A DNA stretch of 54,267 nt, filler included, from Sluysia triapertura (lineage: Eukaryota): assembly GCA_046118255.1 (NCBI GenBank). It is 4 parts of 4 records of this genome, joined end to end, with 100 filler letters (N's around TTAATTAATTAA, not from the genome) between each part and the next. Parts side by side here need not be neighbours in the genome. Positions count along the whole stretch, not along the records: positions 39,409 to 54,267 come from JBJNIA010246651.1; 3 more parts are not named here. The stretch is one strand, 5' to 3'. Positions 1,290 through 54,199 of this stretch are shown one piece after another. A model generated the notes under the pieces. That model was given only the letters and a program-made list of their open reading frames with translations. It had not been told where the DNA came from and did not search any database. A program made the position numbers and the translations under genes. The first letter of the stretch is position 1; every line of letters starts with the position of its first letter.

Positions 1290-1785
1290 TAATAAGTATA
1301 ATAAAAGGTCTAGCCCGAAGACTCTACCTATTGTGGTGGCCAACCTATGACTTAACAAATTTTATTTTTTTGATGGACACAACAAAATCAATCTCTACAA
1401 CATTTTACAACGCTTAATACCATCAAACATGTCAAACATAAAATCACGTATCATTTTAAATACTCTTACATCTAAGTTTTTCATATTTCATCTCATTTAC
1501 TCCCAATAGAACCTTGTTACAGATTTTTCAAACATTCATATTTCATTCTATATAGCATTAAAATCACATTTTATGTTCAGATCATTAACGTACATTAAAT
1601 TGTACTTTAAACACTTCAACCCATGATTCATAATATCAGAATTACAATTCCGGTTAAAAACCATCAATCTACAATTTTAAGTTTATTCAGAACATTTTAA
1701 CCCACGATTTCAACATTCAATCACACTTTCACTCAAAACATTTTAAAGCCATATTTTATCACATTTCACAACAACATCCATACTA
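1290..1785 (-). mobile_element. 3' end of a degenerate non-LTR retrotransposon: decayed ORF, 3' UTR stem-loop and AT-rich tail
   Basis: The minus strand is GT-skewed coding-like sequence with stops, followed by the hairpin AGGT-AG-AGTC-TTCG-GGCT-AG-ACCT and an AT tail. The LINE assignment is inferred from architecture. Confidence 0.4.
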
Positions 1786-3958
1786 GTAGGCTAAAGAAAT
1801 AATATGTTAAGAAAATAGTTAAATTAATAAAGCTCGTGTATTAAGGTTAAAGCAAAATGAATTTGTTTTATTTAGTTTTGATTATATTTATTATCATCTT
1901 TATTTATTATAATTATTATTAATCGGAATTATCACCATTTTTATTATCATTATTAGTTTTTTAATTACTTTATTGTCATTATAATCATTTTATCACTCAA
2001 CAACTAATTTTAATATATTTCCCGCCATCGATAGACAGATCGACTAAACCTAAATCAACATTTCATGTTTGCTGTCTACCGATGACAGATGCTAATCCAA
2101 ATCATTTCCAGACTGTGGCCTGATTGGATGCCCAGTTAATCATAATCATGTGCAAACCATCTCAGATCGTATTGGACGTCCCAATCACAGAGCAAAAATA
2201 AAGTGTAAAAGTTAGTACGCAAATAATAATTATAATTACAAGAAATTGAAGTTACAATACGTAAAAAGTTGATTACAATTTAGACGTTGAGAAACATTAT
2301 TGGATTTTAATAACTATTTTGACTAAAACAAAAAATTTTCTCAGTGAGACAAATAAAAACAGAAAAGAAACATTTTCGATTTAAAAATTTTTAAGCAGTG
2401 ACAAATAAAGAATTAAATCTTATTGAATTTTATTAGTATAAAGTCTTTAACAGCATCGTATACAAACAAAAAAGACAATAATATTGGTCCTAATAAACGA
2501 AAATTTGATAACGTTACAATGATAACAATGGCAGTCAAAATATCGGAAATCTTGGATCGTATTTCCAAATTGAAATGGTCGAAAACGGCTCATATCCGAC
2601 TATTGTAATTCCGTTATTAATAAATCATAAGGATCTGAAATTGGTGTTAAAATAATTGTTCCATGTGGTATGCCCTTTGTACAGCAATGTTTTATAAATT
2701 TATGTAACAATTTTAGTTCCCACTATTCAATTAGCGATTCAAAATTATGCTAAACTAATAAAAATAAACAAAGGATCAAAATTAAAAGTAATGTATTCAA
2801 CTAGAGATATAGATATGACCTATGAATTAACAGAACTTACTATTTTAGATGTACACATCTTAGTAGCGTCCACTACTCGAATTTCAATGGTCCTTTATCA
2901 TACAAATCAAATTAACGAAATATTTTATTATATAAAACAATTGGTAATTGAGGAAACAGATAAGATGATGTGTTATAAATTAGAGGAACAGATCCAAAAA
3001 TTTATAAAAGGTTTACTGAAACTAAGTAATAAATTATGTAAAAGAAATGAAAAGGTACTTAAACAATTTCAATTTTATTCAACGTGTCGTGACAATGTTA
3101 AAATGTATTATCAGATTTTGTTTAGTCACTTGCAACTTTTTTATATCTCGTCAAAGAATAGTTTCTCAACACAGTTAAAACTTAATGTCCGGATTACATC
3201 GCATAACACTGAAGGTACAGTCACTATTAAAGCAATATTTGGAATATTAGTGCATGATATCATGTACTTAAAGTTTTAACCTCTATAGAGTTTAAGTAAA
3301 ATTGGTATTGAAACGACTCCAACTTCACAATCGGATCCGAGTATGTACGAACAAAAACGAAGATCAAATCGAATTCCTATAAAATCTAGTAAAACACAAG
3401 TTGATTCTACCGTTCAGTTGTACGTATAAACTTTTCAATTACAAAATTCAGACATTGTGAAAGTAAATTTTATTTATTATTTAACCAACATAAATTTAAT
3501 AATCTTTTTATTTATCTAATACAATGGCAGATACGAAAAATAGATAATAATCTTTTTATGGCACATGCGAAAAATAGCAGACTCGACAATAAATAAATTT
3601 AGACTGCTTTATTTTCTTCTAGTTTCATTGTATCATGAAAATTTAAAATTAACCATCACTAAAAGAATGATAGTGAAAGATGATTTTTCTTTAAAATTTT
3701 ATATACTAGTTAAGAATTTACAATAATAGACATAACTTTTTAAATAAAAGTCCATAACATAATCTATTTAATCTTTTGTAATACTATTAATAATAAACCA
3801 TTACACCTATTGATAAATATTTTATAATTGACCTTAAGGGCCAACTGAAAGACGATGATTTTATATTTTAAAATGATTTTATGATTGATCTTAATGACCA
3901 ACCGAAAATTACGTGAATATTTTAACTCTGAGTTTTCCATCTATATGAAACAAACTTA

Positions 3959-5371
3959 CTGATTCAATTAATAAATTAATTTTCGAGATCAGGAAGTGCT
4001 TTTCGATGTAATTTGATTGATCAGTTTGCGGAGAATTGGAAGTTGCAATCTCTCTTGTCGTATTCGCGGGATATAACGCTGCTGGAGTACAGAGAATAAC
4101 AAAAAAACGGTGGATGGAATTGATAATTTTTGAATTAATGGTGTCTATTACAACAATTATGGCTTCTTCAATTTGAAAATTTCATACAAATGGCGTCTGT
4201 ACTCCTTTGTTTTTCTTTATATACGCATGTTAAAATTACTTCGTTAAAACACTTCCTTGTTCTGGAACATTCTTTTTAATTTATAATTTTTTAAATAATA
4301 ATAATAATTTTATTTTTTTAATTTTTAATATTTTTTTACAATTTTTTAAAATATTAAATACCATTAAAACATAAAATAAAAAATTTTTACACCTTTACAT
4401 GATATATTAAAAATATATCTTACTTCTGTTAATTCTTTCTTTGCAGTTGTCACAATATTGCTAGTGGTGATGGTAGTAGTAGCACTACTTGTTGATGTAG
4501 CTTGAGGTTTATTAATTGGATGTTCCGAATAGTAGCTCTTAAAAGATGAAATTTGAGGGACCAATAAACTATCAGAAGTACTTATTACAAAATTAGCACA
4601 GGGATTGGCAGTGTTGTTGCTACTGCCCGAAGACGATAGCAGCATGCTGTTACGCATACCGTAATTGATTGATTCCAATGTGCTTGTATTCGTCGATTTA
4701 TCCTGATCAAAATACAGTTTAAATAAACATAACACACCAACATTATTTAATATTCGAAAGGAAGTTATTAAAACATCGCTTGAAAAATATAAATATATTC
4801 ATTAAGATTAATAAATTTTAATAAAATTTTAGTATTTTCTCGTGATTTATCTCGAGAAATAGTAATAATTTGTCATTCTAGCATAGCAACAAGCGATAAG
4901 TAACCCCATTGTTTTATTTTTATTAACAGCAATTACTTCATGTTTCACTTTCAAGAGCTATTTCAAACGTTTTTCCACGAAACATCAATTTAATTACAAT
5001 TATTCTCCAACAGACAGTACCGTAACTAGACCTCTGCAAGATATTAAATTCGGGCCCCTCTATAGCACCAAACAAAATAATCATATTTGTAACGAACTAT
5101 ATATATGTTCAAGCTCCGAACCGCAATTAAATACGTATTAAAAAATTTTTTTCGATGCGTCATATCATTCTTAACTTGAACAGAAATGAAATTTGTTACA
5201 ACGTGTTACACGTTATTGTTAGACTTCATAAAATTGAATGGCCAGGAATCGAACCCGGGCCTTTTGCTGCGCAGTTCGGTGCTCTATCCACAGAGCTATC
5301 AGCCACGCCTAAGAATTTTATACCAAATTCATTAATACCAAATGGCACTTTAGGCCTGTATCCCATTATTA

Positions 5372-5421
<50 letters not shown>

Positions 5422-6697
5422 GCTGTTGTTATAAAGCCACAATTACTTGACTATATTCACCGAACAATAACTTCAAATTAATGATTCTACATCTTCATTA
5501 AAGCTATTAAGCTTTATTCTTCTGTTTGTTATTGAAACAATCTCCTATTTATACAACGTTTACAGGATATTTATTACGATCACCTGATAACTTCGTACTA
5601 GAAAATCTTTAGTATACAGCTCAATTAAATTAATTAAAACTGACACTGAAGAAACTAACATTCAAATAGCACCGAAAAATATTGATAAACCAATTTCAAC
5701 CATGACATAATTACAAAAAAATGTATCATTAAATATATTTAACCCTTGCAATTCAAAAGAGTGTTAGTAGTGTCTTTGTGTACATGGCGGTGTCCCAAAA
5801 GTAACCGAACTGCAAACTTAAACAAAAATTAGATATCAACGAACATTTTATGTCATTATATGTGTTATCTTCGCGAATAGTAGTCTTTGGAATGACTTTT
5901 GTTGCGTGATCTTATTGATTTAGTTCTGATTTTTGTTCAACATGTGCTTCTTATTCTTAAAAATGCAGCAAATAACGAACCTATCTTCAATATTAATAAT
6001 TACTATTCTAAAAAGCCTAGGACAATTGATCATCACGAATGGAACGAAATTTCAGAAACTTGCCAGAAAGTTCAAGGTGGACATTTTGAACATTTGTAAA
6101 TACTAAATATACCTATTAAATTTGTCGTTTTTGTTATCTAATTTTAAGTTTGCGATTTGGTTACTTTTGGGACACCACCCTGTATACAGGTGTATTAGTA
6201 AGTACGACGACGTCAAGAAAGATTTAAAGTTAAAGATCAGAGAAATATGATCTTCTAAATCAGGAATTTCTTCACTTGATACGACTAACAGTAATTATTT
6301 CATGGCTGCAATTAATTTTGCAACAAAAAACGTAAAATTAAACTAAGCAAGCTCTAAACAAATATCTAAAATCCATACCACATTTGTATAATTACTAAGG
6401 CAGGCAAAAAAGTAGTTTATTGTTTGATAAATTATCGATTCTAAGTTAGTATTGGTAATACCGGGGTAAGAATTATCGGCAACAGTTTTGACAAGATTGT
6501 AGCACAATTGGTCAATAGCATCTTGATTCAAATTAAACACTATTTGTGATACGCCATAATAAGATAATGATCTGTTGTCCGATGGCGGGCTAGAATTCGA
6601 TCTGTCATGTGACAATATTTGAGAAAAATCATATTTAGAAGTGCTGGCCAACTCAGAATTCGATTTTACGGCTTGAAACTGCGATTTATACTCAACT
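3959..6697 (-). CDS. Putative exons of an unidentified protein-coding gene (about 6345-6697, 4424-4780, 3959-4225)
   Basis: Three open frames with non-repetitive protein-like composition on the same strand, with plausible AG/GT borders (e.g. ...INLLIES|gtaag at about 3958). No family recognised. Confidence 0.35.
5212..5421 (-). mobile_element. tRNA-derived repeat (SINE-like), copy 1, degenerate, adjoining (ATT)n
   Basis: Minus strand reads TAGCTCTGTGGATAGAGC (A box) ... GGGTTCGATTCC (B box) at about 5235-5305. Both flanks are homologous to 10487-10660. Confidence 0.75.
5783..6182 (+). mobile_element. Internally deleted Tc1/mariner element (MITE-like)
   Basis: TIRs CATGGCGGTGTCCCAAAAGTAACC / revcomp CAGGGTGGTGTCCCAAAAGTAACC, with TA on both sides. 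It retains the transposase C-terminus 'CQKVQGGHFEHL'. Confidence 0.9.
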
Positions 6698-7811
6698 CTG
6701 CAACACATCAACACATCAATTGTTATGTCATTTAAAAATACATGTATCACCAAAATTAGTTTATCGTATGTAGATCTAATAATCCACAAAATAACATTAT
6801 TAATAACCCATAAGTCTCAGTAAATCATAAACTTCATTTATACATTTACGACATTAGTTTTAGAAAATAAACGATAGTTGTTAAATTGCAAATATTGTTT
6901 AAATATTATTTCTATTTAATGTTAGCAGAGCCGGCTCTAGACAAAACAAAATTTGACGCCCTTTCATACAAGAATATGCAAATTTAGTTACTTAAAAAAT
7001 AATACAATAATTATTTACTTACAACATAATAACGTATAAAATAAACAGGCATCATAAAATGCGCACAGGCATTATTTTGATTGAAATATAACTTTATGTA
7101 TTATTCATTCACACAATAACCTATTACGAACACCAGCTCGAGTTAATCAGTATTCTGTGTGTGGATTATCTGTATAAAAACGAAGTCTAGGATTTTGAAA
7201 TATTTAAAATGTTAATAACATACTAAAACATGAAATAATAATAAACTTTTCAGAGCAGTACTATTAAATGAAGTCCGCCAAACCAATGAAATGCGAATTC
7301 ATATTTCATTGGAGCAAAAAAACAGTAGACAAAAAATAAAAATGTCTAACAATAAAAAATTACTTAACAGAAACTAAAAATTTTGGTAGGAAACATAGAA
7401 TGAAATAATTCAGCTTAAAGATATAATTAGAATAAATGATTCAGTTAGACATTGTAATAAAGAATGTATTCAAAAGTATTCAAACTCAATGTCAAAACTT
7501 GCTGTAGTATTACCAAGGATCTAAAACTTACTGATAATTTTACTAAGTTTTTCATCTACGATTATATTTGTAGTGTTGATATCTTTTACTATACAGTTAA
7601 GCATTTTTTTCACAAAGTTAAGCTTCATGAGATGTATTCGGAATGGGAGTTGAAATAAACTCTCCCCAATTGATAATACTAGGCTTTGAGATTGAAATAA
7701 ATCTTAATCAAAACTTGAAATTAACTGAAATTATAATTAAATTATTAAGTGATAATTTATCTAAATAAAGATTAATTTCTTTTCAAATTTAAGATTAAAT
7801 AAGATAAACGC

Positions 7812-8630
7812 TTATGGCCCAATCAACGCTTCACAACAGATAGCGGCCCAGACGGTTACTCCTGGAGCATTAACATCACGTTTAATTTCATTATGTGGAT
7901 TTCCTGTAGCCCAATAAGCGGTGTTATGTCTGTTGACACGACCTTTTAGTTTGAAATGTGCTTCATCAGACCAATAAACTTTCGTGAAAAACGAAGTATC
8001 TTCTAGACATTTGTTAAGGAAGATTTTGCATAATTCAATTCGACAGCCTGGGTCATCTTCTGACACGACATGCACGAGATATGGACAATAAGGCTTCAAA
8101 TCTAAGTGATTAAGCAATCGACGAATAAAGATTCTGAAAATGTTTAATGCCATCAATGCATGTCTTGTCGACTTTTTTGGGCTTAAAGAAAAAGCACCTC
8201 TAATAATCTCAAGACTTTCTGGGCTACAAACGGTGACGGTTCGTCCAGATCTTGAGAAGCCATCTGTTGAACCTGTATCTTCGAACTGCTTAATAAGCTT
8301 GGAAACAGTATCACACTTAATATTTCTCTTAAATTCTCGTTAAATACACAGCACAATTTTATTTATTCTAAGTTTTATAAAAAGGTTTTAATGACGAAAA
8401 CTTTTTTATCTTTATTCAGTCGCTGAATTTTTTCTTCAATTTTTAAGGTAAGAGTTGAATTACAATGAAAATACTCAATTTATCATTTCAAACTGCGCGC
8501 GTGGATCTAAGCAAGCCAAATTTAATAAAAGCTGCACATATAAACAAGATATAAATATAATTAACCTCAGCGCCTGTTAGATGTAGTGAGTGATTGAATG
8601 TGTCATTGCCCCTACCTTCTTACCACCCTG
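7812..8630 (-). mobile_element. Truncated mariner-like (DD37D/DD41D-type) transposon with transposase pseudogene
   Basis: HTH region 'KLIKQFEDTGST...RSGRT' and catalytic 'VYWSDEAHFKLKGRVNRHNTAYWATGNPH...VTVWAAIC...LIGP'. Terminus TA|CAGGGTGG at 8630. Confidence 0.9.
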
Positions 8631-9559
8631 TATGTATAAACTATCACTAAATTTTATCAATCTGAATAAGCCGGATTGTCAATTGTTACTATTTCCAAAA
8701 GATATTACCGTCATGATTTTAAATTCTACTCTTGTTTTTATTCTTTCCTCATTGATTTAATAGAAATTGTACTTTCTGCACTTCTGATTGGAGTTGAATG
8801 TCACATTATTATTACATGATAAATGATACACTATAGATTTGAATCAATAAATGTGCTTAATTACATTAATTATATTACTCTGTACTTACAATATTTCAAT
8901 CATGAAAAAATGAAAATAATCACAATACAATATTCAACATTGACTAAATGTTTCAATAATTATACTGAAACCAAAAAATGCATGAAAAAATGTATATTTT
9001 CCTTAAATACGTTTATTAACATTCAACAAAAAGAAGCAACTATATCTCTCATTAGGCAAGTAATTAAAAAACGATATCACTTTTTTCGTAATCAATTTAT
9101 CAACAGTTAAAACATTTTTAGCGAGAAAATTGATTAGAAAAGCATTTCCTTAAGTCTTATAACGCAAATAAACAAATAAAAGTAAACTAAGTTTCAATTT
9201 TATGGTGTTAAGAGAAAAGTTTACGTCAAATAATATCCTTAAATTACTCTAATCGAATTTCTTTATTGTGTAACACTTAGATCAACTCAGAGTAGACTGA
9301 AGTTTTCACTTGACAGGCACTTAAAATAAACAATTTTCACATTCACATTCGCAACTGTTTTATGATAACACTAAATTAGAACGAACTTAAAATCAATGTT
9401 ACACAAAACAAAATCAGTAAATAAAATATCTTTTTCATATCTAAATTAGCAAAAACATTACCACAATACTTTAATTATTTAGAAAATCTAGTTTCATTTA
9501 TTTCTTTTTTTATAAATATTAAATCAAAGCATTAGTACAGCCTCACAAAAGTATCATAC

Positions 9560-37985: not shown

Positions 37986-38117
37986 AATCAAAATGGCCAT
38001 TTTGATTACACTGATGCTAGTTTATATACTAGTCATGAGCCAATGAAAATCGATGGAATGTTCTAGAATATTCTAGAAGCTTCTATTCTATTTTTAGAAG
38101 CTAATTTTCTTTTTTGG
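37986..38117 (-). promoter_or_regulatory. Heat-shock promoter cassette, copy 1 (6x nGAAn HSE, CCAAT box, TATA, YY1-like motif)
   Basis: gGAAt gTTCt aGAAt aTTCt aGAAg cTTCt at 38055-38084; CCAAT at 38040-38044; TATATAAA on the minus strand at 38021-38028; GCCATTTT palindrome at 37986-38007. Confidence 0.75.
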
Positions 38118-40972: not shown

Positions 40973-43217
40973 CATTTTCTGCTCATTTTGCAAGGTAGGG
41001 TCGAATAATGATTAATAACCATTAATTTAGAAAACAATAAATGTGTCAAATGTCCACCAAATTGTGATCGGTGTATAAATTCTCAGTACTGTGTTCAGTG
41101 TTCGTCTAATTATTTGTTAACTTTGGATTATCAGTGTCGCTCCCAGTGTAGTATCGGTACATATCGTGGTAGAAGAAATCGATGTTACTTATGCCCCAAA
41201 GAATGTTTGGCTTGCAATTCACCAAATGAATGCACTTCGTGTTTCCAAGGCTACTACTTATTGTTGCTGAAACCGTTCTTTGAAAATGAGAAAAGTAGAA
41301 ACACTGTCAGTGTTTCGAATAATCAAGAATCGAATATTAAAGGAATATGTATTAAAAATTGTCCTTTCAGTTACTTCAAAAACACTTCATTGGCGTACTG
41401 TTATCAGTAAGTTTCCAATTTGAATAAGTAGTATAATTAATATAAAAAGAACATATGAAAATAAAAATTGATCTAAATAACAACGATGTTATTTGAATAG
41501 TAAATTAAAATTAATTTTGATTGATATTTTCTTTTTAAGTAATCATTTTTGAATTATTCAGTAAATAATGCAGAAGCGTTATAAATTTAAATAATGCTTT
41601 ATAAAGCTTTAAATAAAAAACTCAAACCAAGAAAGAACTGACTTCCAACAAAACAATATAAATACGCGAATGTAAAGGAATTAGAAAGATCCTTCTGGAA
41701 GATTAAAATAAAAAATTTGTAAAGATAGAAAATCCGTAACTAAAGTTATGACGAATTAAATATTTCAAAGACTGAATAAGTATGGTAATTTTAAAAACAT
41801 GTTTTGTGCAGTCCTGACTGTATTCCATTGGACTGTCCTCTTTAGATGATTTTAAAATGACTTGTGTGGTCAATATGTGCAACTGAAAGGCATCGTACCA
41901 TATATTCTTGGGAGTTAACTTAAAATCTTTCTTTAAACCGGAATTTTTGTGTCTAGAACGCCGCTGGAGAAAATGTGTCGAGTATGATGGTAATTACGTT
42001 AGATTTAGTAAGAAAAGAATTGCTGACAAATGTGAACTCCTTGAATTATAATGTTTATGAAGTTGATATCAAAAGTAAATACATAAATAGTTTATATTAT
42101 TCATCTTTTCAGGTAAGCCTTACAATGACAATGAAAGGTTACATTTTGATATGGTTTGGAGTTTTTATTTGTGATATATTTTCCATTTTTTTGTCTCTCC
42201 CAATTTTGAACAAATGTAACAACTCTTTTTTAAGATTACGCAATTTGATCAATTAAAACAAAAGAGGTCACTATTCACAAAAATCAAGCGAGAAATCTGC
42301 ATTCGAACTGTTGCAGTATTTCCCTTATTTCCTATTGCGTAAACCATGTTTCTATGGAAACAACATATTTCAATTTGTTCACTTTTAAATGGTGATATAC
42401 AGAGCTGTAACTAGGCGGGAGCAACATGTGCACCGACGCAGGGCCGACAAATGAATACATGTGCTCTCGCCAAAAATTTCTCCCATGAAGAACAGTGCAT
42501 TTTATGACGTCATGTATCTTTTGTACTTTGATTACTTTACATTTTGTTGTACGTTGTTTGTTTTTTAATTTATATATACTTTTGAACATGCATGAATTTA
42601 ATATCTTGCACAGAGCCCGTCAGAGGCTAGTTACGGTGATGTATGTAGTGAAACAGTCGAGCAAACATAACCCAACATTACAATAATTACACACTTATCT
42701 AGTCTTCTTTTTGTACTTTTTACTTCCACTCCATACAATACAAACTTTTTGAGGGTTTTCAGTAAGGCCAGATACAAAAATGAATGATTGAAAATGATCT
42801 CCAGAAGGTGGTCTTTTATTGAGGATATAAATACCTCTGAAGAATTCCTATCAGCTTTAAAAAATACTAGATAGGTATCCTGTCCTCAAATGGATTATAT
42901 ATAATATAATATAACCAATTCATAATAAAATACGAACTACTCTCGCGCGAATAAACCAGGTATCCACTCCTTTCGAGGTGTAGGTCGAGGTGGTTCGGCG
43001 TGCACATTTATATCTACTAAATAATTATTACTAACAAAAATAATAGTCTTACTAATAATAATAATAATAAACATATTTATTCAGATGTCATCCCAGTTGC
43101 AAAAAATGTTCAGGCTATTTATCAGACAACTGCTTGGAATGCAGAGAGCCTTATGTGAAATCTAAAATTAGTAATACATGCGTTGATCCTGTTACATTTA
43201 CTTGTGAACCAGGTTGA
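40973..43217 (+). CDS. Furin-like cysteine-rich repeat protein (PCSK5/furin2-like Cys-rich region), partial; exons 40973-40994, 41031-41406, 43085-43212/43217
   Basis: Repeated CxxCxxxCxxC units: 'KCVKCPPNCDRC...CYLCPKECLAC...CTSCFQGYYL...CIKNCPFSYF...CYQ|CHPSCKKCSG...NCLEC'. Introns are phase-compatible GT-AG. Confidence 0.85.
41750..42398 (-). mobile_element. Decayed LINE APE endonuclease fragment in an intron
   Basis: 'LKYVVSIETWF' motif followed by stop-riddled coding-like sequence. Confidence 0.4.
42399..42641. mobile_element. hAT-like MITE
   Basis: Imperfect TIRs CAGAGCTGTAACTAG / revcomp CATCACCGTAACTAG with GC-rich subterminal regions. A similar end occurs at about 5015. Confidence 0.55.
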
Positions 43218-43914: not shown

Positions 43915-46261
43915 CTCAGTTTTAATCCCAGTCAGTAAAGCGTCCGTTATACTTCCAATAACGGTAATAAAGTCGAATATATTCCAATAATCCATAAAAT
44001 AATTCTAATAAATAAATGAATAAAATTAATTATTTTCACAGATTAAACTAATAAATTTAATGAAATTATTTATCCCCTGTTTCAAAACTATAGGACAGCC
44101 CCAATTTTTGTTGTATATACAAACACAATTTATATTATAACAAATCAACAATACTTTTTGATAAATAAAACACGAATAAACTAATACTTATTTATAGTTT
44201 CCAATTTTAGTACACTTTTTATTACTATATTGCATTTAGTTAAATAAATTTCGTTTCAAAAGTATAGGACACATTATACAAACTTTTTATTTAAAAGATT
44301 CTAAAACGTATTGTACAAAATTAGTATTTTATTGATGTTCCTGAGTTTTCCAATACCTCTAAACACATTTTGCTAATCAGATTAATCAATGTATTTACAC
44401 TTTTTATTTCAATATTTTCCCAATTATCCAATATTGCATTTTTAACTCAGATATATTGTTATACTGTTTTCCTTGATTGATAATTGAGACCATAAATTTT
44501 CTATTGTTTTCATCTTTCTGATCACTCTAACACTTTTAATCCATATTGATTTAACTAATTAAGTCTTGCTTAGATCGGTGACAAGTAGCGTTATCCTTCT
44601 GAAAGATGACAGAAAGTTTGACATGCGGAACTACTACTTCTTTTATCAAATCATAATACTTATCTCCATTAAGAGTTGATGGAACCACACGTAAAGCTAG
44701 CTTTTTATCACAAATTATGATTACCCATACCATAACAAATTCTCTTAGAAAATATTTCTTTTGAATCCTTTTATAATTTCCAATAGTATTTTAAACCATC
44801 AGGATCATCCAAATATTCTCATCTGAGAACATTATCGTGGTCCAGTCAGTATGATTATTAATATAATATTCTGATTCTTTCGAACTCACAAAAATATTTT
44901 AAAATAGGACTTGAAAAGATTATTTTATGAGTTTCTTTGAAAAGAATGACAACCATTTTAAATTCTATTTCAATCTAATTCACTTATATTTTTTGGCCTA
45001 TTTAAAATAGCTTTTGAAACGGGCACTGACGATTAATAAACAAATTATATAATAAATGTATATAGATTATCAACTCAATATTAGAGTTCTAAGAAACTTT
45101 AATTAAAATTAATTTTAATGAATTTTAACGACCTGTTGAAAAATAGTCGGTGAAAGTGAAAAGTAAAATAATTTAAGTGATATTTTATATATCGTGTGTA
45201 AGGTTACAAAAACTTATAAATAAAAATATATCTGGCAATAAATAAATGATCAGATTCGTTTATAACAATAAACGAATAACTGGGTTAATTTATGATAGAA
45301 AATGATCTCAATATTGCTCCAAAATTATCAAAATAAATAGTTCGATTGAATAAATTTATAATATTCAAATAATACTTTTGCCAAAATTGTTAATTTTTGA
45401 TCGGGATTTTCGTAATAATAATTTTATTATTAATTATTACTATTACCATATCATTGTTATTTTGTGCATTATTATTGCAAGATTTTTATGATAAATTAAA
45501 CTTAAACTTACAAATTATCTAGAGGCTTTAGTCCACTTAATAAGCACGGTTTATGTCCATTAAGATGAGGTCATATTAGTGTTTTTTGTAGAATGTCAGA
45601 AAACAATCAAAGAAAACTCAACCTTGTAAATTATCGAGCAATCAATACGTACTTAATAAAATTTGTAATTTAAACTAGCCGTTATAGTTTAATTGATTTT
45701 AAAGAGTTACAAATTGAGCTAGGCTTCTTAGGGTCAGAAGTTTATATGAATGATTAAATAAGAATTAAATAAATGCAAATTCCTAAAACCTATTAGTAAA
45801 AGTCAAAATGACAATTAAATCTAATATACATAACTAAATTAATTAATTATGCTTAAGAGATATAATCCCTTAGTGTTTAAGATTTTAAAATTGATTTTGA
45901 CCTAGCCTTTATGGTCTAGAGTACATAAAAATAAATCTAAGTCGTATTTTAGAATTCAACTTTTTAAGTTAGAATTAAAATAATCTTACTTTGATCATAA
46001 ATCGCCAAAAATCCACTGATGATTAATTTTTATTTGTGTAATGGCGTCCGAATTTCATTATGTATTTATTATTGGTTATTTTTCTTTTTTGTATTAATTG
46101 GTTGATTTAAACAAAAATTATTTTATTTTAAAATTTTACATTTATTTGTTAGTTTTACTTTTAATTAATTATTTATTTTTATTATTAAATTTTAATATAA
46201 TACAAATATAATTTTATCAATACACAATTATAATTAAAATTGTAACACAATTAATACTTAA

Positions 46262-46306
<45 letters not shown>

Positions 46307-49300
46307 CATTAGATATTTATTTTAAAAATATTTATAGGCAATACTATATCAAACCTTAGGATTTAAACCTATCATTTTCAAAATACATTCCAATGTAAAC
46401 AATGTAATAAATCCATAATTCAAATATTGAAGAGCTTCGTGATAATTGCTGTACGATAACGATTTCTCAAGCTGTAATTTAATATATTCTTCATTGTCTA
46501 ATTTTGATGGATCTAATTCTTTTGAATAATACTAAAACAATATTAGGAAAATTAAATTTAATAACAATTTAACTATTTATGTTAGTAAGTAAAATATTTA
46601 AAACTGAAAATTGGATTATAAATTATAAAAATCGCACTTACTCGAAGCATCAAAACAATTGTGTTTAATGAAATCATTATTAAAATAAATATTTCAAATG
46701 GTGTAGATACAACCAAACACCATATACGATATTGAAGTGAAGGTTTATTTGATGGTACGAAGCGTATTCTTGGTTGTGCTTGAACAGCAAAATCTATACA
46801 TAGTTTTTGATTTTTATCTATACCTTGATCACGAAATGATTTTTGACCTTCTTCTTGAAATGTGATAATAATCAAAGCTACGAATATATTGACAAAAAAG
46901 AATGGGAATATAATGAAAAATATTATATAAAACACTGCCATTTCACTTCGGTAATTATATATTGGTCCTTTGTTGATCATGGTAGCATCCATAGAGTGGC
47001 GAAGAACACTTTAATAATAATAATAATTATAATAATAATGATAATAATGTCAAGTTGTCATCACAAACATATAAAATCTTATTTTTCAAAAAAGAAAATT
47101 GGCTTCTAAAAATACAGTAGAAGCTTCTAGAATATTCTAGAACATTCAATCGAATCTCATTGGCTGATGACTAGTACATAAACTAGCATCAATTAAATGA
47201 GAATCGCCATTTTGAAGCTAGTCGCCATTTGCAATTTTTGTTTGGTAAAATTTTGCGGCGATATTTTTGGAGCAATTGTTAAACTCAAATTTTGGGAAAT
47301 ATCCGCACAGTCACAACTATTTAATTTAATTTCATTTGTTGGAAATTGATGTAATTTTAGAATTTGAGATTATGAAATCAATGTAATTTTTTAAGTGCCG
47401 ATACATTTAGGAGTTAATACACACTCAAATTGTTAATACACGCTCTCGGAGCTTTAATCCTTTTTACTGTCTTCTGTTTTTTATTATTACTCCAAGATCT
47501 TTTGGTATTTCGTGAATAAAGTTGATATTGTATAGGATATAGAATGATGTTATTAAAATTTCATCATTTGAGCATTTGTTAAAGACCCTAAACAACAGAA
47601 CATTTATTTTCAGATAAAATATTAGCTTATTTAGTTACAGGAACGCCCTCTCTGCTCAAAAATATTTTGTACTAGGTGAAGTATTAGCAAAAAACCACCA
47701 TAATAATGATGATAATAATAGTAACATATATTAATTTATACATTACCAATATCTACTACAAAATAAATACTTAAAAGAAATGTATTAAAACATTCATAAT
47801 TTTCCAGTATTTTGACACATTCTGGGAAATGTTTGTATATTTTGAAACATAACCAATTATTTATCATATCCCTAACTTCTTCTACAGATCTCGGATTTTT
47901 CTCTTACATTTATTGATAATAAACTTCAATTTCCACCCTTTTTTATATAAGTGAAGAATATTATGTCTCATTTTATTATATCTACTTTTCTTATTATAAT
48001 ATCACCACCACCATCATCATTATTATTATTATTATTTTGGAATATGAATCATATTTATACATTTATCATCTTTAATAAATGTCAAGGTTATTCGTCATTT
48101 GAATTAAGCAATTACAGTTATTGTACTTTAACATTATTTGTAGGATATATTTGAGCTAAGTATGAAATATAATATGATCATTTTAATACAGCAAGTTCTG
48201 TGAAATTGAACATGAGTAATCAACCAAAGTTATTATATCGTTCTGGTATGGTTAGTATATACTTGTCATTATTATCGATTACTGTATAAAACCAAAACTA
48301 AAACTTAAATTATTTATCTTAACGAATTATTATTTTTTGAATAATTTTTTATTATTAAAAAATCGATAATTTTGAATTATTATTTTATTCATTTACAGTT
48401 TGTAGTTTATAACATATTATTACTAACGACTGATTTAATACTAACTTCAGTTTTGCATTTTCAAGTGTAATTAGTATAAAGTAATTTTTAATTATAATAA
48501 TCATAATGAATATTAAAATAATAATTAATTTCGAATCAGTGTTTAATTCAGTATTGTGTTTGAAGTTTAAAATTTGTACGAAATTTATAATTAGCTGTTG
48601 GAAATCAGAAAATTATAAAATATTTAAATTATTACATTGTTAAAATAGTATTAATTATAATTGAAGTTTCTTTTGAAATAATTACAATTTCAGAACCATA
48701 AAATAAATAAGACCAAAATAAACATCACTTAGTGAAGCAATTCTCAAATAAGATTGGAATATCACAAGGATCCAATTACAATGAAGTTAATATTAATCAA
48801 TTATTAACATCGTTAGTACTTATTACTTTTATTATGATATCAAAAAATTAAATACCCAATGCAACAAATGCATCTTTTGTAATAAATTTTCTAATGTTTG
48901 ATATTTTCTTTAGTATTCAAAATACTAATATCAATAATTCTTAATAAAGTTTTGAAACAAAAATCGAACAAAGTACATTTAATAATTAATTTAGTTATTT
49001 TGACACATTGAACCATTCTTGAGCACTACCGTAACTGAAACTGATAGTGTAATCAGGAATAATATTGGCGATTTTTCGCTTTAGTTGTTAATCAGTTCAG
49101 GAAGTTGTACATAGGAGAATACTAATGATGTAAATTATTAATTATACATTAAAATGTAAATTTTATCTACTTATTATATTAATCAAATAAAATTTATCAA
49201 AATTAACAAACTCAAGCCATCCTTCAGTAGTAGTGACTGTGAACAAAGTGACAAAACTGTATAAAATATTATCAAAATGAAAACAAAAACGCATCCAATT

Positions 49301-49355
49301 TCTTTTGATAACTTTCGGTGAATCGATACCATCAGAATAATCGATAAATTCACCT
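43915..49355 (-). CDS. Voltage-gated calcium channel alpha-1 subunit (Cav2-like), domain III pore to IVS3; exons 49212-49355, 46642-47008, 46355-46531, about 43915-44004
   Basis: '[24 protein letters not shown]|VLRHSMDAT...[41 protein letters not shown]...[11 protein letters not shown]...[10 protein letters not shown]...LNTIVLMLR|YY...[10 protein letters not shown]|[21 protein letters not shown]'. [19 protein letters not shown] is Cav2-type. Confidence 0.93.
44074..45028 (-). mobile_element. Degenerate Tc1-like transposon in a Cav intron
   Basis: '[10 protein letters not shown]', 'DDPDG', 'MVW...[10 protein letters not shown]...[13 protein letters not shown]'. Ends share the C(C/T)GTTTCAAAA..TAT motif. 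Confidence 0.85.
45499..46030 (-). ncRNA. Divergent member (copy E) of the structured repeat family, in a Cav intron
   Basis: The reverse complement begins GGACGCC...GTAAG like copy B. It ends ataaaccgtgcttattaagtggactaaagcctctagataatttgtaagtttaagtt, which aligns with the end of copy C. Confidence 0.55.
47087..47232 (+). promoter_or_regulatory. Heat-shock promoter cassette, copy 2, antisense within a Cav intron
   Basis: aGAAg cTTCt aGAAt aTTCt aGAAc aTTCa at 47119-47148; ATTGG; TACATAAA; two CGCCATTT motifs. About 105 bp are homologous to 38011-38117 reverse-complemented. Confidence 0.75.
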
Positions 49356-49445
49356 CTGGAAATTTAGTGGAAATTATATTTTGATAAACTAGTAAATATA
49401 ATGTTCAAAAAAAGTATAAATATAAGCGATAATTGTATATAATTA

Positions 49446-49913
49446 CAGTAGTGGCCAAATTATTACCCTAAATATTAGTAATTGTGGGTAAACACAGAGA
49501 AAATTGTGATATTTGTTGTGATATTTAAGTAAAGTCTGACACCTTTAATATAATTAATTATAAATTTTTGACAATAATTTGTCAGTGATACCACAGTAAG
49601 ATAAATCAATTATTGTAATCAATCTATTTCGTATTTAGTTCAAATCTTAATCATCCAATAATTTCCTGATCCTTAGTGGCATGCCACGGATGAGCTTTGG
49701 GCACAAGTCTTTGATCTCGTCATCCTGATGCCATATTTTTATCATGGTTTCAATAAGTTCCGTACTGGTGGTTGGTTTATGAGTAAGAACTTTCCTTTTG
49801 ACAATCTCACACAGATTTTTTATGGGATTCATATGACTGGAGGGTAGCAGCTTAACACCATGATCATCGAGAAACATTTTTCCTGTTTTAGTATAATAAT
49901 TTGACCACCACTG
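49446..49913 (-). mobile_element. Internally deleted Tc1-like element
   Basis: TIRs CAGTAGTGGCCAAATTATTA / revcomp CAGTGGTGGTCAAATTATTA with TA flanks. Retains the transposase C-terminus 'MNPIKNLCEIVKRKV...LIRGMPLRI'. Confidence 0.88.
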
Positions 49914-51074
49914 TATAATCATTGTAATTACAAAACCTAAACATTTCATACTCGTACAACATCAAAGTTAATGGTTTCATTTTAAACAGATGCATTTGAA
50001 AAGTCAGGAAATCCAAACAATTTTCACGTAACATATTACTAGAAAATAACTAGTGAAATTTACACTGACAAGTAGGCGGAAAGTTTACAAAAATTTAATG
50101 AACCATATAAGTCTCTTCATGATAATATAAATAAACGTTTCAGAAAAGTACAAGATCGAGTATCTTGTTTGTGTTGAATTTGATATGAATATATAGGATA
50201 TGCATGGAGACTACTTGGAATATTCGGAACTTTTGTTGGTGAAAATAAAAATGAAGCAGTGTTATTCTACCTTACCAGACAATATGCTAAATATTTCTAT
50301 GTTAGTTTTGTAATCGGTGATGAATATTTTTCATACAAAATACAACGTGAAGTTGATTTTTCTACGTTCAAATGACTCATCAAATTCTAACAGATGCTAT
50401 TGAAATTTGAGATGAAAAATGAATGTAGATACCTGTCTGAAATGTATAACTGTAAAATTGATTTTTATCAAGTATTCTTTGATGAACAATATCGAATTGC
50501 ACTTAAAAGGTAAACTAAATTTTGTCAGATATTGTTATTTAGCTGACACTTGTTTAGCTGATACCTGTTTAGATATTTTTGTAATGCTAGCAAATTCATC
50601 TCACACTTATGAGGATCTAAATTATTCGATATTAAAATCATACGCACCTGATGTTAATACGACATCACTAGTATTTTGTAGCGGTGATATAATCACAGTT
50701 TTACAATTTGAAAAATCTTTTTCGTCAAAATTTTGTACAAGATGTAAACCTGGAGATGATGTATGTAATACCGAACCGAATATTATTAGCATTAAAAGAC
50801 CGATGTTGTAGTATTATAAAGTTATAAGTTTATCTAGTAGTTTTGTTTGGAGAATGCACGATATTGTATTTTAAAATCTTACGATGTATCGTGTGTTCAC
50901 GAAGTTATGGATAGGTCAATTAGATTGTTTTCAAAATTTGACTACTAATTTACCTTATGTAGAACTGAAACGTTCGTCATACAGATATTCAGTGATTTGT
51001 TTGTTAAAACAAGGCCATTTTTGTGATAAAATTCAACATTTTTCAAGGATAGTATGAAACTATTAATCAGGATG

Positions 51075-51497
51075 AAACTCTTCATTAGGTTTCCTTCTTG
51101 AAAGTCGACTCGTCATTAAAACACACTTGACTCCAGTCATCCTCAGTTGAATGTTAGTGTTGCTTAGCCCATGCCAACCTTTTACTGATCATCTCTGGTG
51201 TCAACTTAGGCTTTCTCTGGGTCGTCTTACTCGCAAACCATTGTCTACAAGTCTCCTTCTGACTGTTGTGGCACTAACTTGAATTTCGCTTCTGCAAGTC
51301 ATACTAGTAGCTTGTAGAAAGTTTCTCGCGATTTAGAACTTAGCTATATTATATATCGCATTTTGTATATTATACATAACATTTCATATATTATACACAA
51401 TATTTCGTATCCTACACATTCAATAATGAGCAAATGTTAAGAAAACCGAAGAAAATCATATTTTTCCTGTTTTAGTCTAATAACATGGCCACCATTG
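51075..51497 (-). mobile_element. Tc1-like transposon 5' fragment
   Basis: TA|CAATGGTGGCCA terminus and 'KRLAWAKQH*HSTEDDWSQVCFNDESTF'. Confidence 0.75.
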
Positions 51498-51937
51498 TAT
51501 ATATCAAAACAGTCCAATATTATCTAATAATTTCACCGTGGTTTAACATTTTGAACGAATCATTATTATGGTAGCGACCCTATTAATACATCAATTTGTC
51601 TTGTCAAATAACTTTTGATCATTCCTTTTAATAATGTCATTAATGTTTCATTGTTTTATTTTATTCAATAAGTAAATTATTAATAGTTTGCACAGCCTAA
51701 GCTGGTAGTAAAAATATAAGAATGAAATTTTTGTTAAACCAAATAAAAAATGTGATAAAATCGTTTAATTCAACGAGTATTACGATTTTTGTTAGCAAGA
51801 GAACAAGATTACAGATAAGTACAAAGACAACAATGTAAGAGTAGGAACGTTAGGTAAGATATATAATTTGAAAGACTCAAAAGGCATAGAAATTTACGTT
51901 TCAGCTATAATTAAGTCTAAACTTCGTCCTCAAACTC

Positions 51938-52017
<80 letters not shown>

Positions 52018-52133
52018 CATAATGATAATAATAATAATCATTATGATAATAATAATCATAATAATAATCATAGTGATAATAATAATCATTATGATAATAA
52101 TAATCATTATCATAATAATAATCATAATAATAA
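51938..52133 (+). repeat. (AAT)n microsatellite grading into a compound AAT/CAT/GAT repeat
   Basis: Direct reading. Confidence 0.97.
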
Positions 52134-52547
52134 AATTTAAGATCTTACTGGCAAGTTTCAAAATTGAGTTTCGACGAATCGTTGCAGTAGAAAAACTTTC
52201 CTTTGAATAATTGAACAGCAATTACAGCAAAAATAAATTGGAACAAAACGTAAACAATTAATATATTAATGACATTTTTTATTGATTGAATCACTGTTTC
52301 AAATACTTCCTGAAAATAAATCAATTATTAACAATGTCACAAACTCAAAATGCAGACTTAGATACGAAAGTTAGTGATTGTGACTTCGAGATTTCAATGT
52401 AAGATATATCAACAGAATACGGATTTAGTAAGATTTACATAATACAGCTTCTTTATGTAAAATCGTTTCTGTTTCAGAAATATTATAATGAATGATTTAT
52501 TTTAAATGATTTTAACTACGTATTTTGCCGTAGGTATCAGCGCAATA

Positions 52548-52548
<1 letters not shown>

Positions 52549-52595
<47 letters not shown>
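52549..52595 (+). repeat. (ATT)n microsatellite
   Basis: Direct reading. Confidence 0.97.
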
Positions 52596-53317
52596 CAATA
52601 TTGTTATACATAAAAATAATGATGGTAACTTTAGTTTTTAGAATACAATTGTTTTTTAGTTGTTTTTCCCCAATTTTCTAATGAAAAATCCATTTCCAGA
52701 TTCTCATTTTTCATTTCAATCATCTCATTCTGAACTCATTATCTAAATATTAAAAATTCAGCATTCCGTAATTAAAAATTAAAATTTGACTTTGCTCAAT
52801 ATTAAGGCTTTCTCGATCAAACTTTATCTTCATCAAAAGATCTTTACAACACATACATAGTTACAACTTTGACAGTATTCCACAATCAAACATTACTTAT
52901 AAAATTGTACTTTTTTTCTTAATTAAGTTAATTAAGATTTTAATTAATTAATTTACTTTTAAACTTACAGTTGTTTTAGATGCTCCACCTTCACCACTCT
53001 GATTCTTTTTTCTACTTCTCTATGTTAATTATTAATGTATGAAATTTTAACAATGACTTTATCTCACAAATCTCGAATGCTTATCATGGTTCAAAGATTC
53101 TTAAAAGTTGATGAGGTCTTAAATGATCGTAATATTCACAAAATCAAGATTACTATAGAATTTTAATTGCGTCAATTTAAAAATATAAAGACAATAGAAT
53201 TAAATTGCAGATAAAGATGAAGAGAGTTTAAAGTTAAGAATATTATAAATCCTTAAACCTTACATAAAGGGGAGTAATAAACAAAGCAAAATAATCATTG
53301 GTCATTTGACCGGTATC

Positions 53318-53466: not shown

Positions 53467-54199
53467 TCTATAAAATTAAAAGTCATGAAATAGTAAAAAA
53501 AACAATACAAAAAAACTAAATATTACTTTAAATAGTAGTAATGAATTCTGGAGTAATGCGATTGGAGGAGAGTAAATATATCCATGGAAAATGTATAGTC
53601 ATTACGAGTTATAGACAAATAATTCACATTAGATTTATGATCATAAATAGCAATAAAAATAAAAAATAACTGGTGTTATGAAGAACTTGTTTTAACACCT
53701 TTTTCTCAGTTGGTTTAACACTACTCAAAGTAAAAATAGATATCCATTTAATTAAGTTTACTGTATTGGGCCAATGAAATGAGTAATGTTTTCGAAATGT
53801 AAAAGTAAGTACTGATTTAGTATCAAGTTTAAATAAATTTTTGAAAATTAAAACGTCTTTTTACATCGATAATTTCNNNNNNNNNNNNNNNNNNNNNNNN
53901 NNNNNNNNNNNNNNNNNNNNNNNNNNNNNNNNNNNNNNNNNNNNNNNNNNNNNNNNNNNNNNNNNNNNNNNNNNNNNNNNNNNNNNNNNNNNNNNNNNNN
54001 NNNNNNNTTAGTTCCCTAATGAAACAAGGAGATAACTAATTTGAGATTATATAATAAGTAATTTCAAAAAATCAGAACACTATCCGCTGATAACAAGGTT
54101 TAAAGAGATAAAAAGAATTCACCCTATAGCAAAAGTTTTTCTCTAAGTAAAAATCCTGTAGATCACTCAACAACTAGTCTTAAATTTCTTCCTCTAGAC

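What the first reader, a model, noticed from the sequence alone, without database searches (positions are those of the whole stretch)
47087..47232. Duplicated complete heat-shock promoter cassette with no heat-shock gene attached
Seen: two homologous cassettes of about 105 bp (38011-38117 minus; 47087-47191 plus). Each has six perfectly alternating nGAAn pentamers, then ATTGG, then a TATA-like box flanked by ACTAG/CTAG, then GCCATTTT motifs. Established: three or more alternating nGAAn units bind HSF1 trimers, and TEs carrying HSEs are known (ONSEN, DIRS-1, Caenorhabditis Helitrons). Inference: a mobile stress-inducible promoter. This copy would fire antisense-oriented from a Cav intron, and the other points toward the RPB11 3' end.
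Basis: partly seen in the sequence, partly recalled or inferred. Interest (0 to 1): 0.7.

Follow-up and report, generated by a model that had tools for sequence, protein, structure and literature searches.

The report
High-copy mobile heat-shock promoter repeat
A 130-base stretch inside an intron of a calcium-channel gene looks like a complete heat-shock gene promoter with no gene attached. It is one copy of a short repeat present thousands of times in this animal's genome, so it could spread heat-responsive switches around the genome, though no expression data exist to show that it does.

Summary
The motifs are real. Six perfect alternating nGAAn/nTTCn units lie at 47119-47148 (0.12 matches expected by chance). 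ATTGG boxes flank them at 47098 and 47159. A TATA-like box follows at 47175-47182, then GCCATTTT at 47206-47213.

The stretch lies on the + strand, about 78 bp from the 3' splice site of a Cav2-type calcium-channel exon on the minus strand (47008-46642). No coding gene follows it.

"Duplicated" understates the case. In the only public run that holds this DNA, summed contig depth is about 70,000-265,000 over 47087-47213, against about 10-18 for the single-copy flanks. At least 114-128 contigs cover each variant site, and about 190 contigs diverge into unlike flanks at 47213/47216.

The family's majority letters keep the HSE and give a perfect TATATAAA. This copy has TACATAAA and at least 8 differences. 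The repeat ends 5-8 bp after the predicted start site.

Best reading: a short MITE-like dispersed repeat that carries an outward-facing heat-shock-type promoter. Transposon class, HSF binding and heat induction are untested, because no RNA run exists. It is a new variant of a known kind; the closest parallel is the HSE-carrying Helitrons of Caenorhabditis.

The parts
47085..47216 (+). This locus's copy of the high-copy repeat unit, about 130 bp. The right end is firm and the left end is estimated.
Evidence: summed contig depth is 101,352 in bin 47003-47169 and 44,060 in bin 47170-47336, against 12-60 in neighbouring bins. Depth is 265,446 at 47115 and 83 at 47241. Loose ends of 101 and 88 contigs start after 47213 and 47216.
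47085..47091 (+). Left terminal 7-mer TTCAAAA, the inverse of TTTTGAA at 47210-47216
   Evidence: closing stem of the DNA fold. It is short and AT-rich, so it could arise by chance.
47098..47102 (-). Distal CCAAT box (AGCCAAT on the minus strand), at about -111
47119..47148 (.). Heat-shock element: six perfect alternating nGAAn/nTTCn units, nearly palindromic
   Evidence: In one search the only listed family difference inside it (47134 A>G) falls on a free 'n' position.
47159..47163 (-). Proximal CCAAT box (AGCCAATGA on the minus strand), at about -50
47151..47206 (.). Imperfect palindrome (arms of about 24 nt) with the TATA box in its loop
   Evidence: The DNA fold of 47080-47225 gives z = -5.0. 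With the family's majority letters the outer arms are complementary at 11 of 11 positions. This copy has C47156/G47201 where the majority has T/A.
47175..47182 (+). TATA box: TACATAAA in this copy, TATATAAA in the family majority
   Evidence: In one search, T at 47177 accounts for 222,073 of 243,805 depth.
47206..47213 (+). GCCATTTT: an initiator-like CCATTTT (predicted A+1 at 47209). It also resembles the YY1-type GCCAT motif.
   Evidence: The spacing to the TATA box is read from the sequence. The match to the Inr consensus YYANWYY and to the YY1 core comes from my own knowledge, not from a test.
47224..47230 (+). Second GCCATTT, outside the family boundary. It belongs to an 18-bp stretch (47214-47231) built of element-like words.
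   Evidence: boundary at 47213/47216
46642..47008 (-). Host exon of a Cav2-type calcium-channel gene (domain III S6 to domain IV S1). Acceptor AG at 47010-47009, donor GTAAGT from 46641.
   Evidence: human Cav2.1, 8x90, E 2e-42; Ion_trans
52145..52324 (-). ORF containing the next upstream Cav exon (Ion_trans; exon limits not determined). Together with the exon at 47008 it bounds the intron of about 5.1 kb that holds the cassette.
   Evidence: PF00520, E 4.5e-10

Best explanation
The stretch 47085-47216 is one somewhat decayed copy of a short (about 130 bp), non-coding, strongly self-complementary dispersed repeat. The repeat is present in the order of thousands of copies in this AT-rich animal genome. 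The family's majority sequence is a complete heat-shock-type RNA polymerase II promoter: CCAAT box, six-unit HSE, CCAAT box, TATATAAA, then an initiator-like CCATTTT. The repeat ends only 5-8 bp after the predicted start site, so each copy would read out into whatever DNA lies beside it.

Inferred mechanism, not shown: on heat stress, HSF trimers bind the HSE, NF-Y-type factors bind the CCAAT boxes, and transcription starts near 47205-47210. At this locus it would run into the Cav2 intron, antisense to the channel pre-mRNA, with the first AATAAA at 47515.

The element spread at the DNA level in the manner of a MITE, because a promoter that lies upstream of its own start site cannot be copied through its own RNA. 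This copy keeps the HSE and both CCAAT boxes but has a weakened TATA box. It is therefore more likely to be an HSF-binding site than a strong promoter.
For: The motifs and their spacing are read directly. The HSE is far beyond chance.

One search supports a high-copy dispersed family. Depth is about 70,000-265,000 over the cassette against 10-18 for the perfectly matching single-copy contigs. At least 114-128 contigs cover each variant site. 189 contigs diverge into unlike flanks (agreement 0.48) at 47213/47216. Coverage of intron and exon is even, so the run is genomic DNA.

The majority letters keep all GAA/TTC triplets and give a canonical TATATAAA.

No tRNA or Rfam family was found. No coding potential or Pfam hit was found in or downstream of the cassette. 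The unit is strongly structured, with a 7-bp terminal inverted repeat. There is precedent for transposons that disperse functional HSEs (PMC6927752).
Against: There is no expression or HSF-binding evidence of any kind, because no RNA run is on record. No target-site duplication is visible at this copy, and the terminal inverted repeat is only 7 AT-rich bases, so the MITE label is weak and the transposon class is open. The left boundary is estimated, not observed. Summed contig depth is not a true copy number (the tool's own caveat) and may be inflated about two-fold by overlapping contig ends. The palindromes could serve a purpose other than transcription. The TATA box sits in the loop of a hairpin, which is not a usual promoter feature. 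Other copies could not be read, so TSDs, empty sites and the link to any heat-shock gene promoter remain untested.
Confidence: 0.6

Rival explanations
1. It is a structured, palindromic MITE-like repeat whose promoter look is incidental. On this reading, the TTCTAGAA palindromes at 10-bp spacing and the hairpin around the TATA box are recognition or structural features for its mobilising enzyme, or for small-RNA production. The element does not act as a heat-shock promoter, though it may still soak up HSF.
For: There are three internal palindromes plus a terminal one, and the DNA fold gives z = -5.0. There is a possible compensatory pair: C47156/G47201 here against T/A in the majority, with the minor letters at 29% and 32% of depth. 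This suggests the hairpin itself is maintained. A 10-bp tandem duplication could produce a six-unit HSE without selection for HSF binding.
Against: Five separate promoter motifs lie in canonical order and spacing, with TATAAA at -32 from an initiator match. The family majority has a perfect TATATAAA. A perfect six-unit HSE would be expected to bind HSF whatever its origin (established knowledge).
Confidence: 0.22
2. It is the terminal part of a Helitron-type rolling-circle transposon, like the HSE-bearing Helitrons of Caenorhabditis. The 47151-47206 hairpin and the CTAG at 47218-47221 would then be the 3' end.
For: In this copy the hairpin ends at 47206, and 11 nt later comes CTAG followed by T. 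That spacing recalls Helitron 3' ends (own knowledge). No target-site duplication is seen, as expected for Helitrons. Helitrons carry most HSEs in C. elegans.
Against: Family homology stops at 47213/47216, before that CTAG. The hairpin is AT-rich and much longer than the usual 16-20 bp. The candidate 5' TC at 47086-87 is preceded by T, not A. No Rep/helicase remnant was seen among the ORFs scanned in the piece.
Confidence: 0.08
3. It is a short retroposon on the minus strand with an internal promoter. Transcription would start at the sharp 47216/47213 end, positioned by the AAAATGGCG (YY1-type) motif as in the L1 5' end. The HSE and CCAAT boxes would then lie inside the transcript.
For: The sharp boundary is at the GCCAT end. 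On the minus strand the YY1-like motif lies 4-13 nt from that end and both CCAAT boxes are in forward orientation. An (ATT)n run lies 35 bp beyond the other end (47010-47054) and could be a tail.
Against: There is no poly(A) at the unit's other end. The canonical TATA-to-initiator spacing on the + strand would then be a coincidence. No such polymerase II SINE with an HSE is known to me.
Confidence: 0.07
4. It is only a relic of a duplicated heat-shock gene promoter, arising from segmental duplication or a pseudogene, and is not mobile.
For: The architecture is that of an hsp70-type promoter.
Against: The depth, the number of contigs and about 190 different flanks show a dispersed high-copy family. 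No heat-shock coding remnant lies downstream.
Confidence: 0.03

Closest known systems
HSE-carrying Helitrons of Caenorhabditis (Garrigues et al. 2019, PMC6927752)
   Same: Both are DNA-level repeat families that scatter large numbers of HSF-binding sites through an animal genome, including near and inside unrelated genes. In C. elegans, 953 Helitrons carry HSEs, with more than 10,000 HSEs in total, and some confer heat induction on neighbouring genes.
   Different: Here the unit is only about 130 bp. It carries a whole promoter (two CCAAT boxes, HSE, TATA box, initiator) rather than HSE arrays, and it ends at the predicted start site. Helitron end features are not met for the family.
ONSEN/ATCOPIA78 LTR of Arabidopsis and the DIRS-1 terminal repeats of Dictyostelium
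   Same: These are mobile elements whose own promoter contains HSEs and which are switched on by heat.
   Different: They are long retrotransposons that use the HSE to drive their own RNA. The unit here has no body, no R-U5 region and no coding capacity, and the host is an animal.
Alpha-gamma / alpha-beta heat-shock repeats at Drosophila 87C1 (own knowledge, not checked here)
   Same: A copy of an hsp70 promoter is joined to non-hsp sequence, giving heat-induced transcripts that encode no heat-shock protein.
   Different: That is a local, low-copy tandem cluster made by duplication, not a genome-wide family of thousands of copies.
Stress-responsive MITEs such as rice mPing (own knowledge; reviewed in PMC7329337 and PMC5056178, listed and not read)
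   Same: These are short, non-coding, high-copy DNA elements that bring stress-responsive cis-elements to neighbouring genes.
   Different: mPing has clear TIRs and a TTA/TAA TSD, and it supplies enhancer-type motifs, not a full TATA-plus-initiator promoter. No TSD and only a 7-bp terminal inverted repeat are seen here.

Membership tests
Heat-shock (HSF-dependent) polymerase II promoter | At least three contiguous inverted nGAAn units | tested here: met
   Six perfect units at 47119-47148
Heat-shock (HSF-dependent) polymerase II promoter | Core promoter (TATA box and/or initiator) at the proper distance downstream of the HSE | tested here: met
   TATAAA lies 32 bp before the A of CCATTTT and the HSE lies at -89 to -62. 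The TATA box is perfect in the family majority and carries one change in this copy.
Heat-shock (HSF-dependent) polymerase II promoter | HSF binding and heat-induced transcription | not testable with these tools
   No RNA run holds the stretch, and the only run is genomic contigs.
Heat-shock (HSF-dependent) polymerase II promoter | Drives a chaperone gene | tested here: not met
   ORFs on the + strand downstream to 51057 have no significant Pfam family: the only match at E up to 0.1 among those scanned is DUF3206 at E 0.068, below its cut-off. The flank 47217-47503 is covered by a perfectly matching single-copy contig (47178-47506) and shows only background-level depth.
MITE (miniature inverted-repeat transposable element) | Short, non-coding, high copy number, dispersed | tested here: met
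   The unit is about 130 bp with stops in all frames. The depth, the contig counts and the roughly 190 different flanks are.
MITE (miniature inverted-repeat transposable element) | Terminal inverted repeats | tested here: inconclusive
   Only TTCAAAA/TTTTGAA, 7 bp and AT-rich. The left end was not observed directly.
MITE (miniature inverted-repeat transposable element) | Target-site duplication | tested here: not met
   The flanks ...cttattt and gctagtc... share no duplication under either boundary choice. Only one copy could be examined.
Helitron | 5' TC and 3' CTRR ends, a hairpin 10-12 bp before the 3' end, and insertion between A and T | tested here: inconclusive
   A hairpin followed 11 nt later by CTAG and then T exists in this copy, but family homology ends before it at 47213/47216. 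The 5' TC is preceded by T.
Solo LTR | TG...CA ends, TSD, and an R-U5 segment downstream of the start site | tested here: not met
   The family ends 5-8 bp after the predicted start, and no TSD is seen.
Polymerase III SINE | tRNA-, 7SL- or 5S-derived head with A/B boxes, and an A-rich or simple-repeat tail | tested here: not met
   No tRNA was found and no Rfam match, even at E up to 1. There is no tail at the unit's ends.
Tandem satellite | Head-to-tail arrays | tested here: not met
   There is a single copy in the 14.9-kb piece. The loose-end consensus after 47213/47216 is heterogeneous and does not restart the unit.

The most novel reading that the evidence does not exclude
A 'promoter-only' mobile element: a 130-bp unit that consists of nothing but a complete heat-shock promoter ending at its own start site, amplified to thousands of copies. 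If so, a large share of this animal's HSF-binding sites and heat-induced transcription starts (antisense RNAs, intronic RNAs, new first exons) would come from one repeat family. The hairpin around the TATA box would be maintained by compensatory change, perhaps as the feature recognised for mobilisation.
Probability: 0.3. Interest if true: 0.8.

Novelty: new variant of a known kind. Interest (0 to 1): 0.55.

Why it matters
Transposons that spread transcription-factor sites are a main route by which stress responses are rewired, and the Caenorhabditis Helitrons are the best animal case for heat shock. This looks like a second, independent animal case in a much more compact form: a whole promoter rather than bare HSEs, in a unit short enough to synthesise and test directly. 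If active, thousands of copies would create heat-induced antisense and intronic transcripts across the genome and would compete for HSF. At this locus the element sits about 78 bp from a splice acceptor of a neuronal calcium-channel gene. If inactive, it is still a clean example of how a perfect six-unit HSE can be present thousands of times in a genome without marking a heat-shock gene. That matters for motif-based annotation.

Tried and rejected
- **Second copy in the piece.** blastn-short and the repeat finder found none.
- **Public collections.** I scanned for the HSE core and for the TATA arm in metagenome contigs (twice), viral contigs and prokaryotic genome contigs. All gave 0 hits.
- **Exact-product look-ups.** The Cav exon ORF and the Tc1-like ORF were looked up to fetch more contigs of this organism. 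Neither is on record.
- **Literature.** No paper holds six k-mers taken from this copy and from the family-majority letters. Searches combining heat-shock element with MITE, repeat family, flatworm or captured promoter gave nothing specific.
- **RNA evidence.** Only one run holds the DNA and it is genomic.
- **Organism.** The name is coded. The Cav exon is at most 62% identical to any fragment in the protein collection, and it groups only weakly with trematodes on a long branch. I do not name a phylum with confidence.
- **Rejected readings.** I rejected a polymerase III SINE, a solo LTR (no room for R-U5), a tandem satellite, and a nested heat-shock gene in the intron.

Full report
**Observation.**
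- Six alternating pentamers, aGAAg cTTCt aGAAt aTTCt aGAAc aTTCa, occupy 47119-47148.
- ATTGG follows at 47159-47163.
- A TATA-like tacataaa lies at 47175-47182 between ACTAG and CTAG.
- GCCATTTT lies at 47206-47213 and GCCATTT at 47224-47230.

The four-unit HSE pattern matches nowhere else, with 0.12 matches expected from shuffles. All three-unit matches in the piece also fall here, with 0.26 expected. With the piece's composition (26.5% G+C), a perfect six-unit array is expected about 0.07 times per Gb. The motif array is therefore real and not chance.

**Setting.** The cassette is on the + strand, inside an intron of about 5.1 kb of a gene on the minus strand.
- The exon just to its left is 47008-46642 on the minus strand, with acceptor AG at 47010-47009 and donor GTAAGT from 46641.
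- That exon encodes domain III S6 to domain IV S1 of a Cav2-type calcium channel. Its best PDB match is human Cav2.1 (8x90) at E 2e-42.
- The next upstream exon lies within the ORF at 52145-52324 (Ion_trans).
- The cassette's left end is about 78 bp from the splice acceptor. A (TAA)n run at 47010-47054 lies between them and forms the pyrimidine tract on the gene's strand.
- The intron also holds a Tc1-like transposon remnant. The ORF 49647-49949 on the minus strand matches Sleeping Beauty transposase at E 2e-4.
- Downstream of the cassette on the + strand, no scanned ORF has a Pfam family above its cut-off; the only match at E up to 0.1 is DUF3206 at E 0.068 on 50884-51057. There is no tRNA and no Rfam family.

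"No heat-shock gene attached" therefore holds, as far as ORF-plus-Pfam scans can show.

**It is a high-copy dispersed repeat, not a duplication.** Only one public run holds this DNA. Its organism is coded and it is kept as contigs. I laid it on 45500-50500.
- Perfectly matching single-copy contigs tile intron and exon alike at depth 10-18, so the run is genomic DNA.
- Over the cassette the summed depth jumps to 101,352 in bin 47003-47169 and 44,060 in bin 47170-47336.
- At single positions it is 265,446 (47115), 255,054 (47134), 243,805 (47177) and 68,723 (47201). It falls to 83 at 47241.
- 101 and 88 contigs leave the alignment after 47213 and 47216 respectively. Their flanks agree poorly with one another (0.48) and do not restart the unit.

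The family is therefore dispersed, with a sharp right end at 47213/47216. The tool warns that summed depth is not a copy number, and overlapping contig ends may inflate it about two-fold. I claim only "in the order of thousands". The left end was not shown directly.

**The family majority against this copy.** One search lists eight places in the cassette where most of the family has another letter: 47115 C>G, 47134 A>G, 47148 A>C, 47154 A>T, 47156 C>T, 47177 C>T, 47195 A>T and 47201 G>A.
- None touches a GAA/TTC triplet or a CCAAT box. The change at 47134 falls on a free "n" position of the HSE.
- The change at 47177 makes the family's TATA box a canonical TATATAAA (91% of depth). This copy has TACATAAA.
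- This copy is thus an older, about 6% diverged member with an intact HSE but a weakened TATA box. Eight changes are too few to show selection on the motifs: I would expect about 2.7 hits in motifs and see one, P about 0.18 (my arithmetic).

**Architecture.** I take the A of CCATTTT (47209) as +1. CCATTTT fits the initiator consensus YYANWYY, and the wider GCCATTTT resembles the YY1 core; both resemblances rest on my own knowledge.
- TATAAA starts at -32.
- The proximal CCAAT box lies at -50.
- The HSE spans -89 to -62.
- The distal CCAAT box lies at -111.
- The family ends at +5 to +8.

This is the order and spacing of a classical hsp70-type promoter, and nothing of a transcribed body is part of the repeat. 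A promoter that lies upstream of its own start cannot be carried along in its own transcript. The family must therefore have spread as DNA.

**Structure.** The unit is unusually self-complementary: the DNA fold of 47080-47225 gives z = -5.0, and none of 200 shuffles folds as well.
- Terminal 7-mers TTCAAAA (47085-91) and TTTTGAA (47210-16) pair with each other.
- GCTTCTA and TAGAAGC pair around 47102-47126.
- The HSE itself is nearly palindromic.
- A palindrome with arms of about 24 nt spans 47151-47206, with the TATA box in its loop.

With the majority letters, the outer arms of that palindrome are complementary at 11 of 11 positions. This copy has C47156 paired with G47201 where the majority has T paired with A. 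The minor letters make up 29% and 32% of depth. This looks like a compensatory pair carried by a subfamily, but I could not test whether the two letters occur on the same copies. I see no target-site duplication at this copy.

**Class.**
- Short, non-coding, AT-rich, structured, very abundant and dispersed fits a MITE-like element. However, the terminal inverted repeat is only 7 bp and no TSD is seen, so the label is weak.
- A Helitron end is tempting, because in this copy the hairpin is followed 11 nt later by CTAG and then T. But family homology stops before that CTAG, and the 5' TC is preceded by T.
- A solo LTR is excluded, because there is no room for R-U5.
- A polymerase III SINE is excluded by the lack of any tRNA or Rfam head or any tail.
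- A tandem satellite is excluded by the heterogeneous flanks.
- A minus-strand retroposon with an L1-like, YY1-positioned internal promoter remains a minor rival.

**How it most likely works.** The motif content, the repeat status and the boundaries are shown. The following is inferred.
- HSF trimers bind the six-unit HSE on heat stress, and CCAAT-binding factors flank them.
- Polymerase II starts near 47205-47210 and reads out into the flank.
- At this locus that gives an RNA antisense to the Cav2 intron, with the first AATAAA at 47515.

Because of the TATA change, this copy may bind HSF without firing strongly. No run on record as RNA holds the stretch, so none of this could be tested.

**Comparison with what is known.** The closest documented case is the Caenorhabditis Helitrons: 953 HSE-containing Helitrons with more than 10,000 HSEs, some of which confer heat induction on neighbouring genes (PMC6927752). 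The differences here are:
- a 130-bp unit;
- a complete promoter rather than HSE arrays;
- termination at the start site;
- an unresolved, non-Helitron-looking end structure.

ONSEN, DIRS-1, the Drosophila 87C alpha-gamma repeats and mPing are further parallels, cited from my own knowledge. No paper in the library holds k-mers of this cassette, and no public non-host collection holds it.

The host could not be named. The Cav exon is at most 62% identical to any fragment in the protein collection, and it groups only weakly with trematodes on a long branch.

**Verdict.** It is a new variant of a known kind, namely transposon-borne heat-shock elements. It is of moderate to good interest and is directly testable by heat-shock 5'-end RNA mapping and a genome-wide alignment of the copies.

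Noticed in passing
window 49446-50175 (ORF 49647-49949 on the minus strand): A Tc1-like transposon remnant. The ORF matches the Sleeping Beauty transposase catalytic domain (E 2e-4). A Tc1-style end, CAGTAGTGGCCAAA, starts at 49446. Summed depth reaches 59,233, so this is also a very high-copy family. A related fragment lies at 51460-51501 (D10).
   Followed up: partly
window 47504-47837: A second, moderately repeated stretch with summed depth about 1,700-8,900. Other copies carry 30-36 extra letters at a junction at 47651/47652. One single-copy contig joins 47214 directly to 47549. The cassette and this repeat may therefore be parts of one longer element, interrupted or extended here by 334 bp.
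   Followed up: no
window 47156 and 47201: A possible compensatory change in the TATA hairpin. This copy has C-G where the family majority has T-A, and the minor letters are at similar frequency (29% and 32% of depth). Whether the two occur on the same copies was not tested.
   Followed up: partly
window 51938-52143 and 52548-52607: Long (ATA)n and (TAT)n microsatellites in inverted orientation (60 nt at 95% complementarity, about 550 nt apart) bracket the Cav exon at 52145-52324 (I17). Intronic inverted repeats around an exon could pair in the pre-mRNA.
   Followed up: no
window 44551-44733 (minus strand): A 60-aa ORF with a mariner/Tc1-like '...FQKDNATCH...' motif, recognised from my own knowledge. 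It has no PDB match, and its only Pfam match is a weak DUF1408 hit (E 0.014, below the cut-off), so this remains unconfirmed.
   Followed up: partly
window 41114-41410 (+ strand): A cysteine-rich ORF with a weak Furin-like_2 match (E 0.003, below Pfam's cut-off). It may be an exon of a different gene on the + strand, downstream of the Cav gene's 3' part.
   Followed up: no
window 47214-47231: The 18 bp just outside the family's right end are built of the element's own words: GAAGCTAG resembles the start of the HSE, and TCGCCATTT repeats 47204-47212. This may be a small local duplication or a variant tail of the element. It is unexplained.
   Followed up: no
window 53877-54007: A run of 131 N inside the piece.
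   Followed up: no
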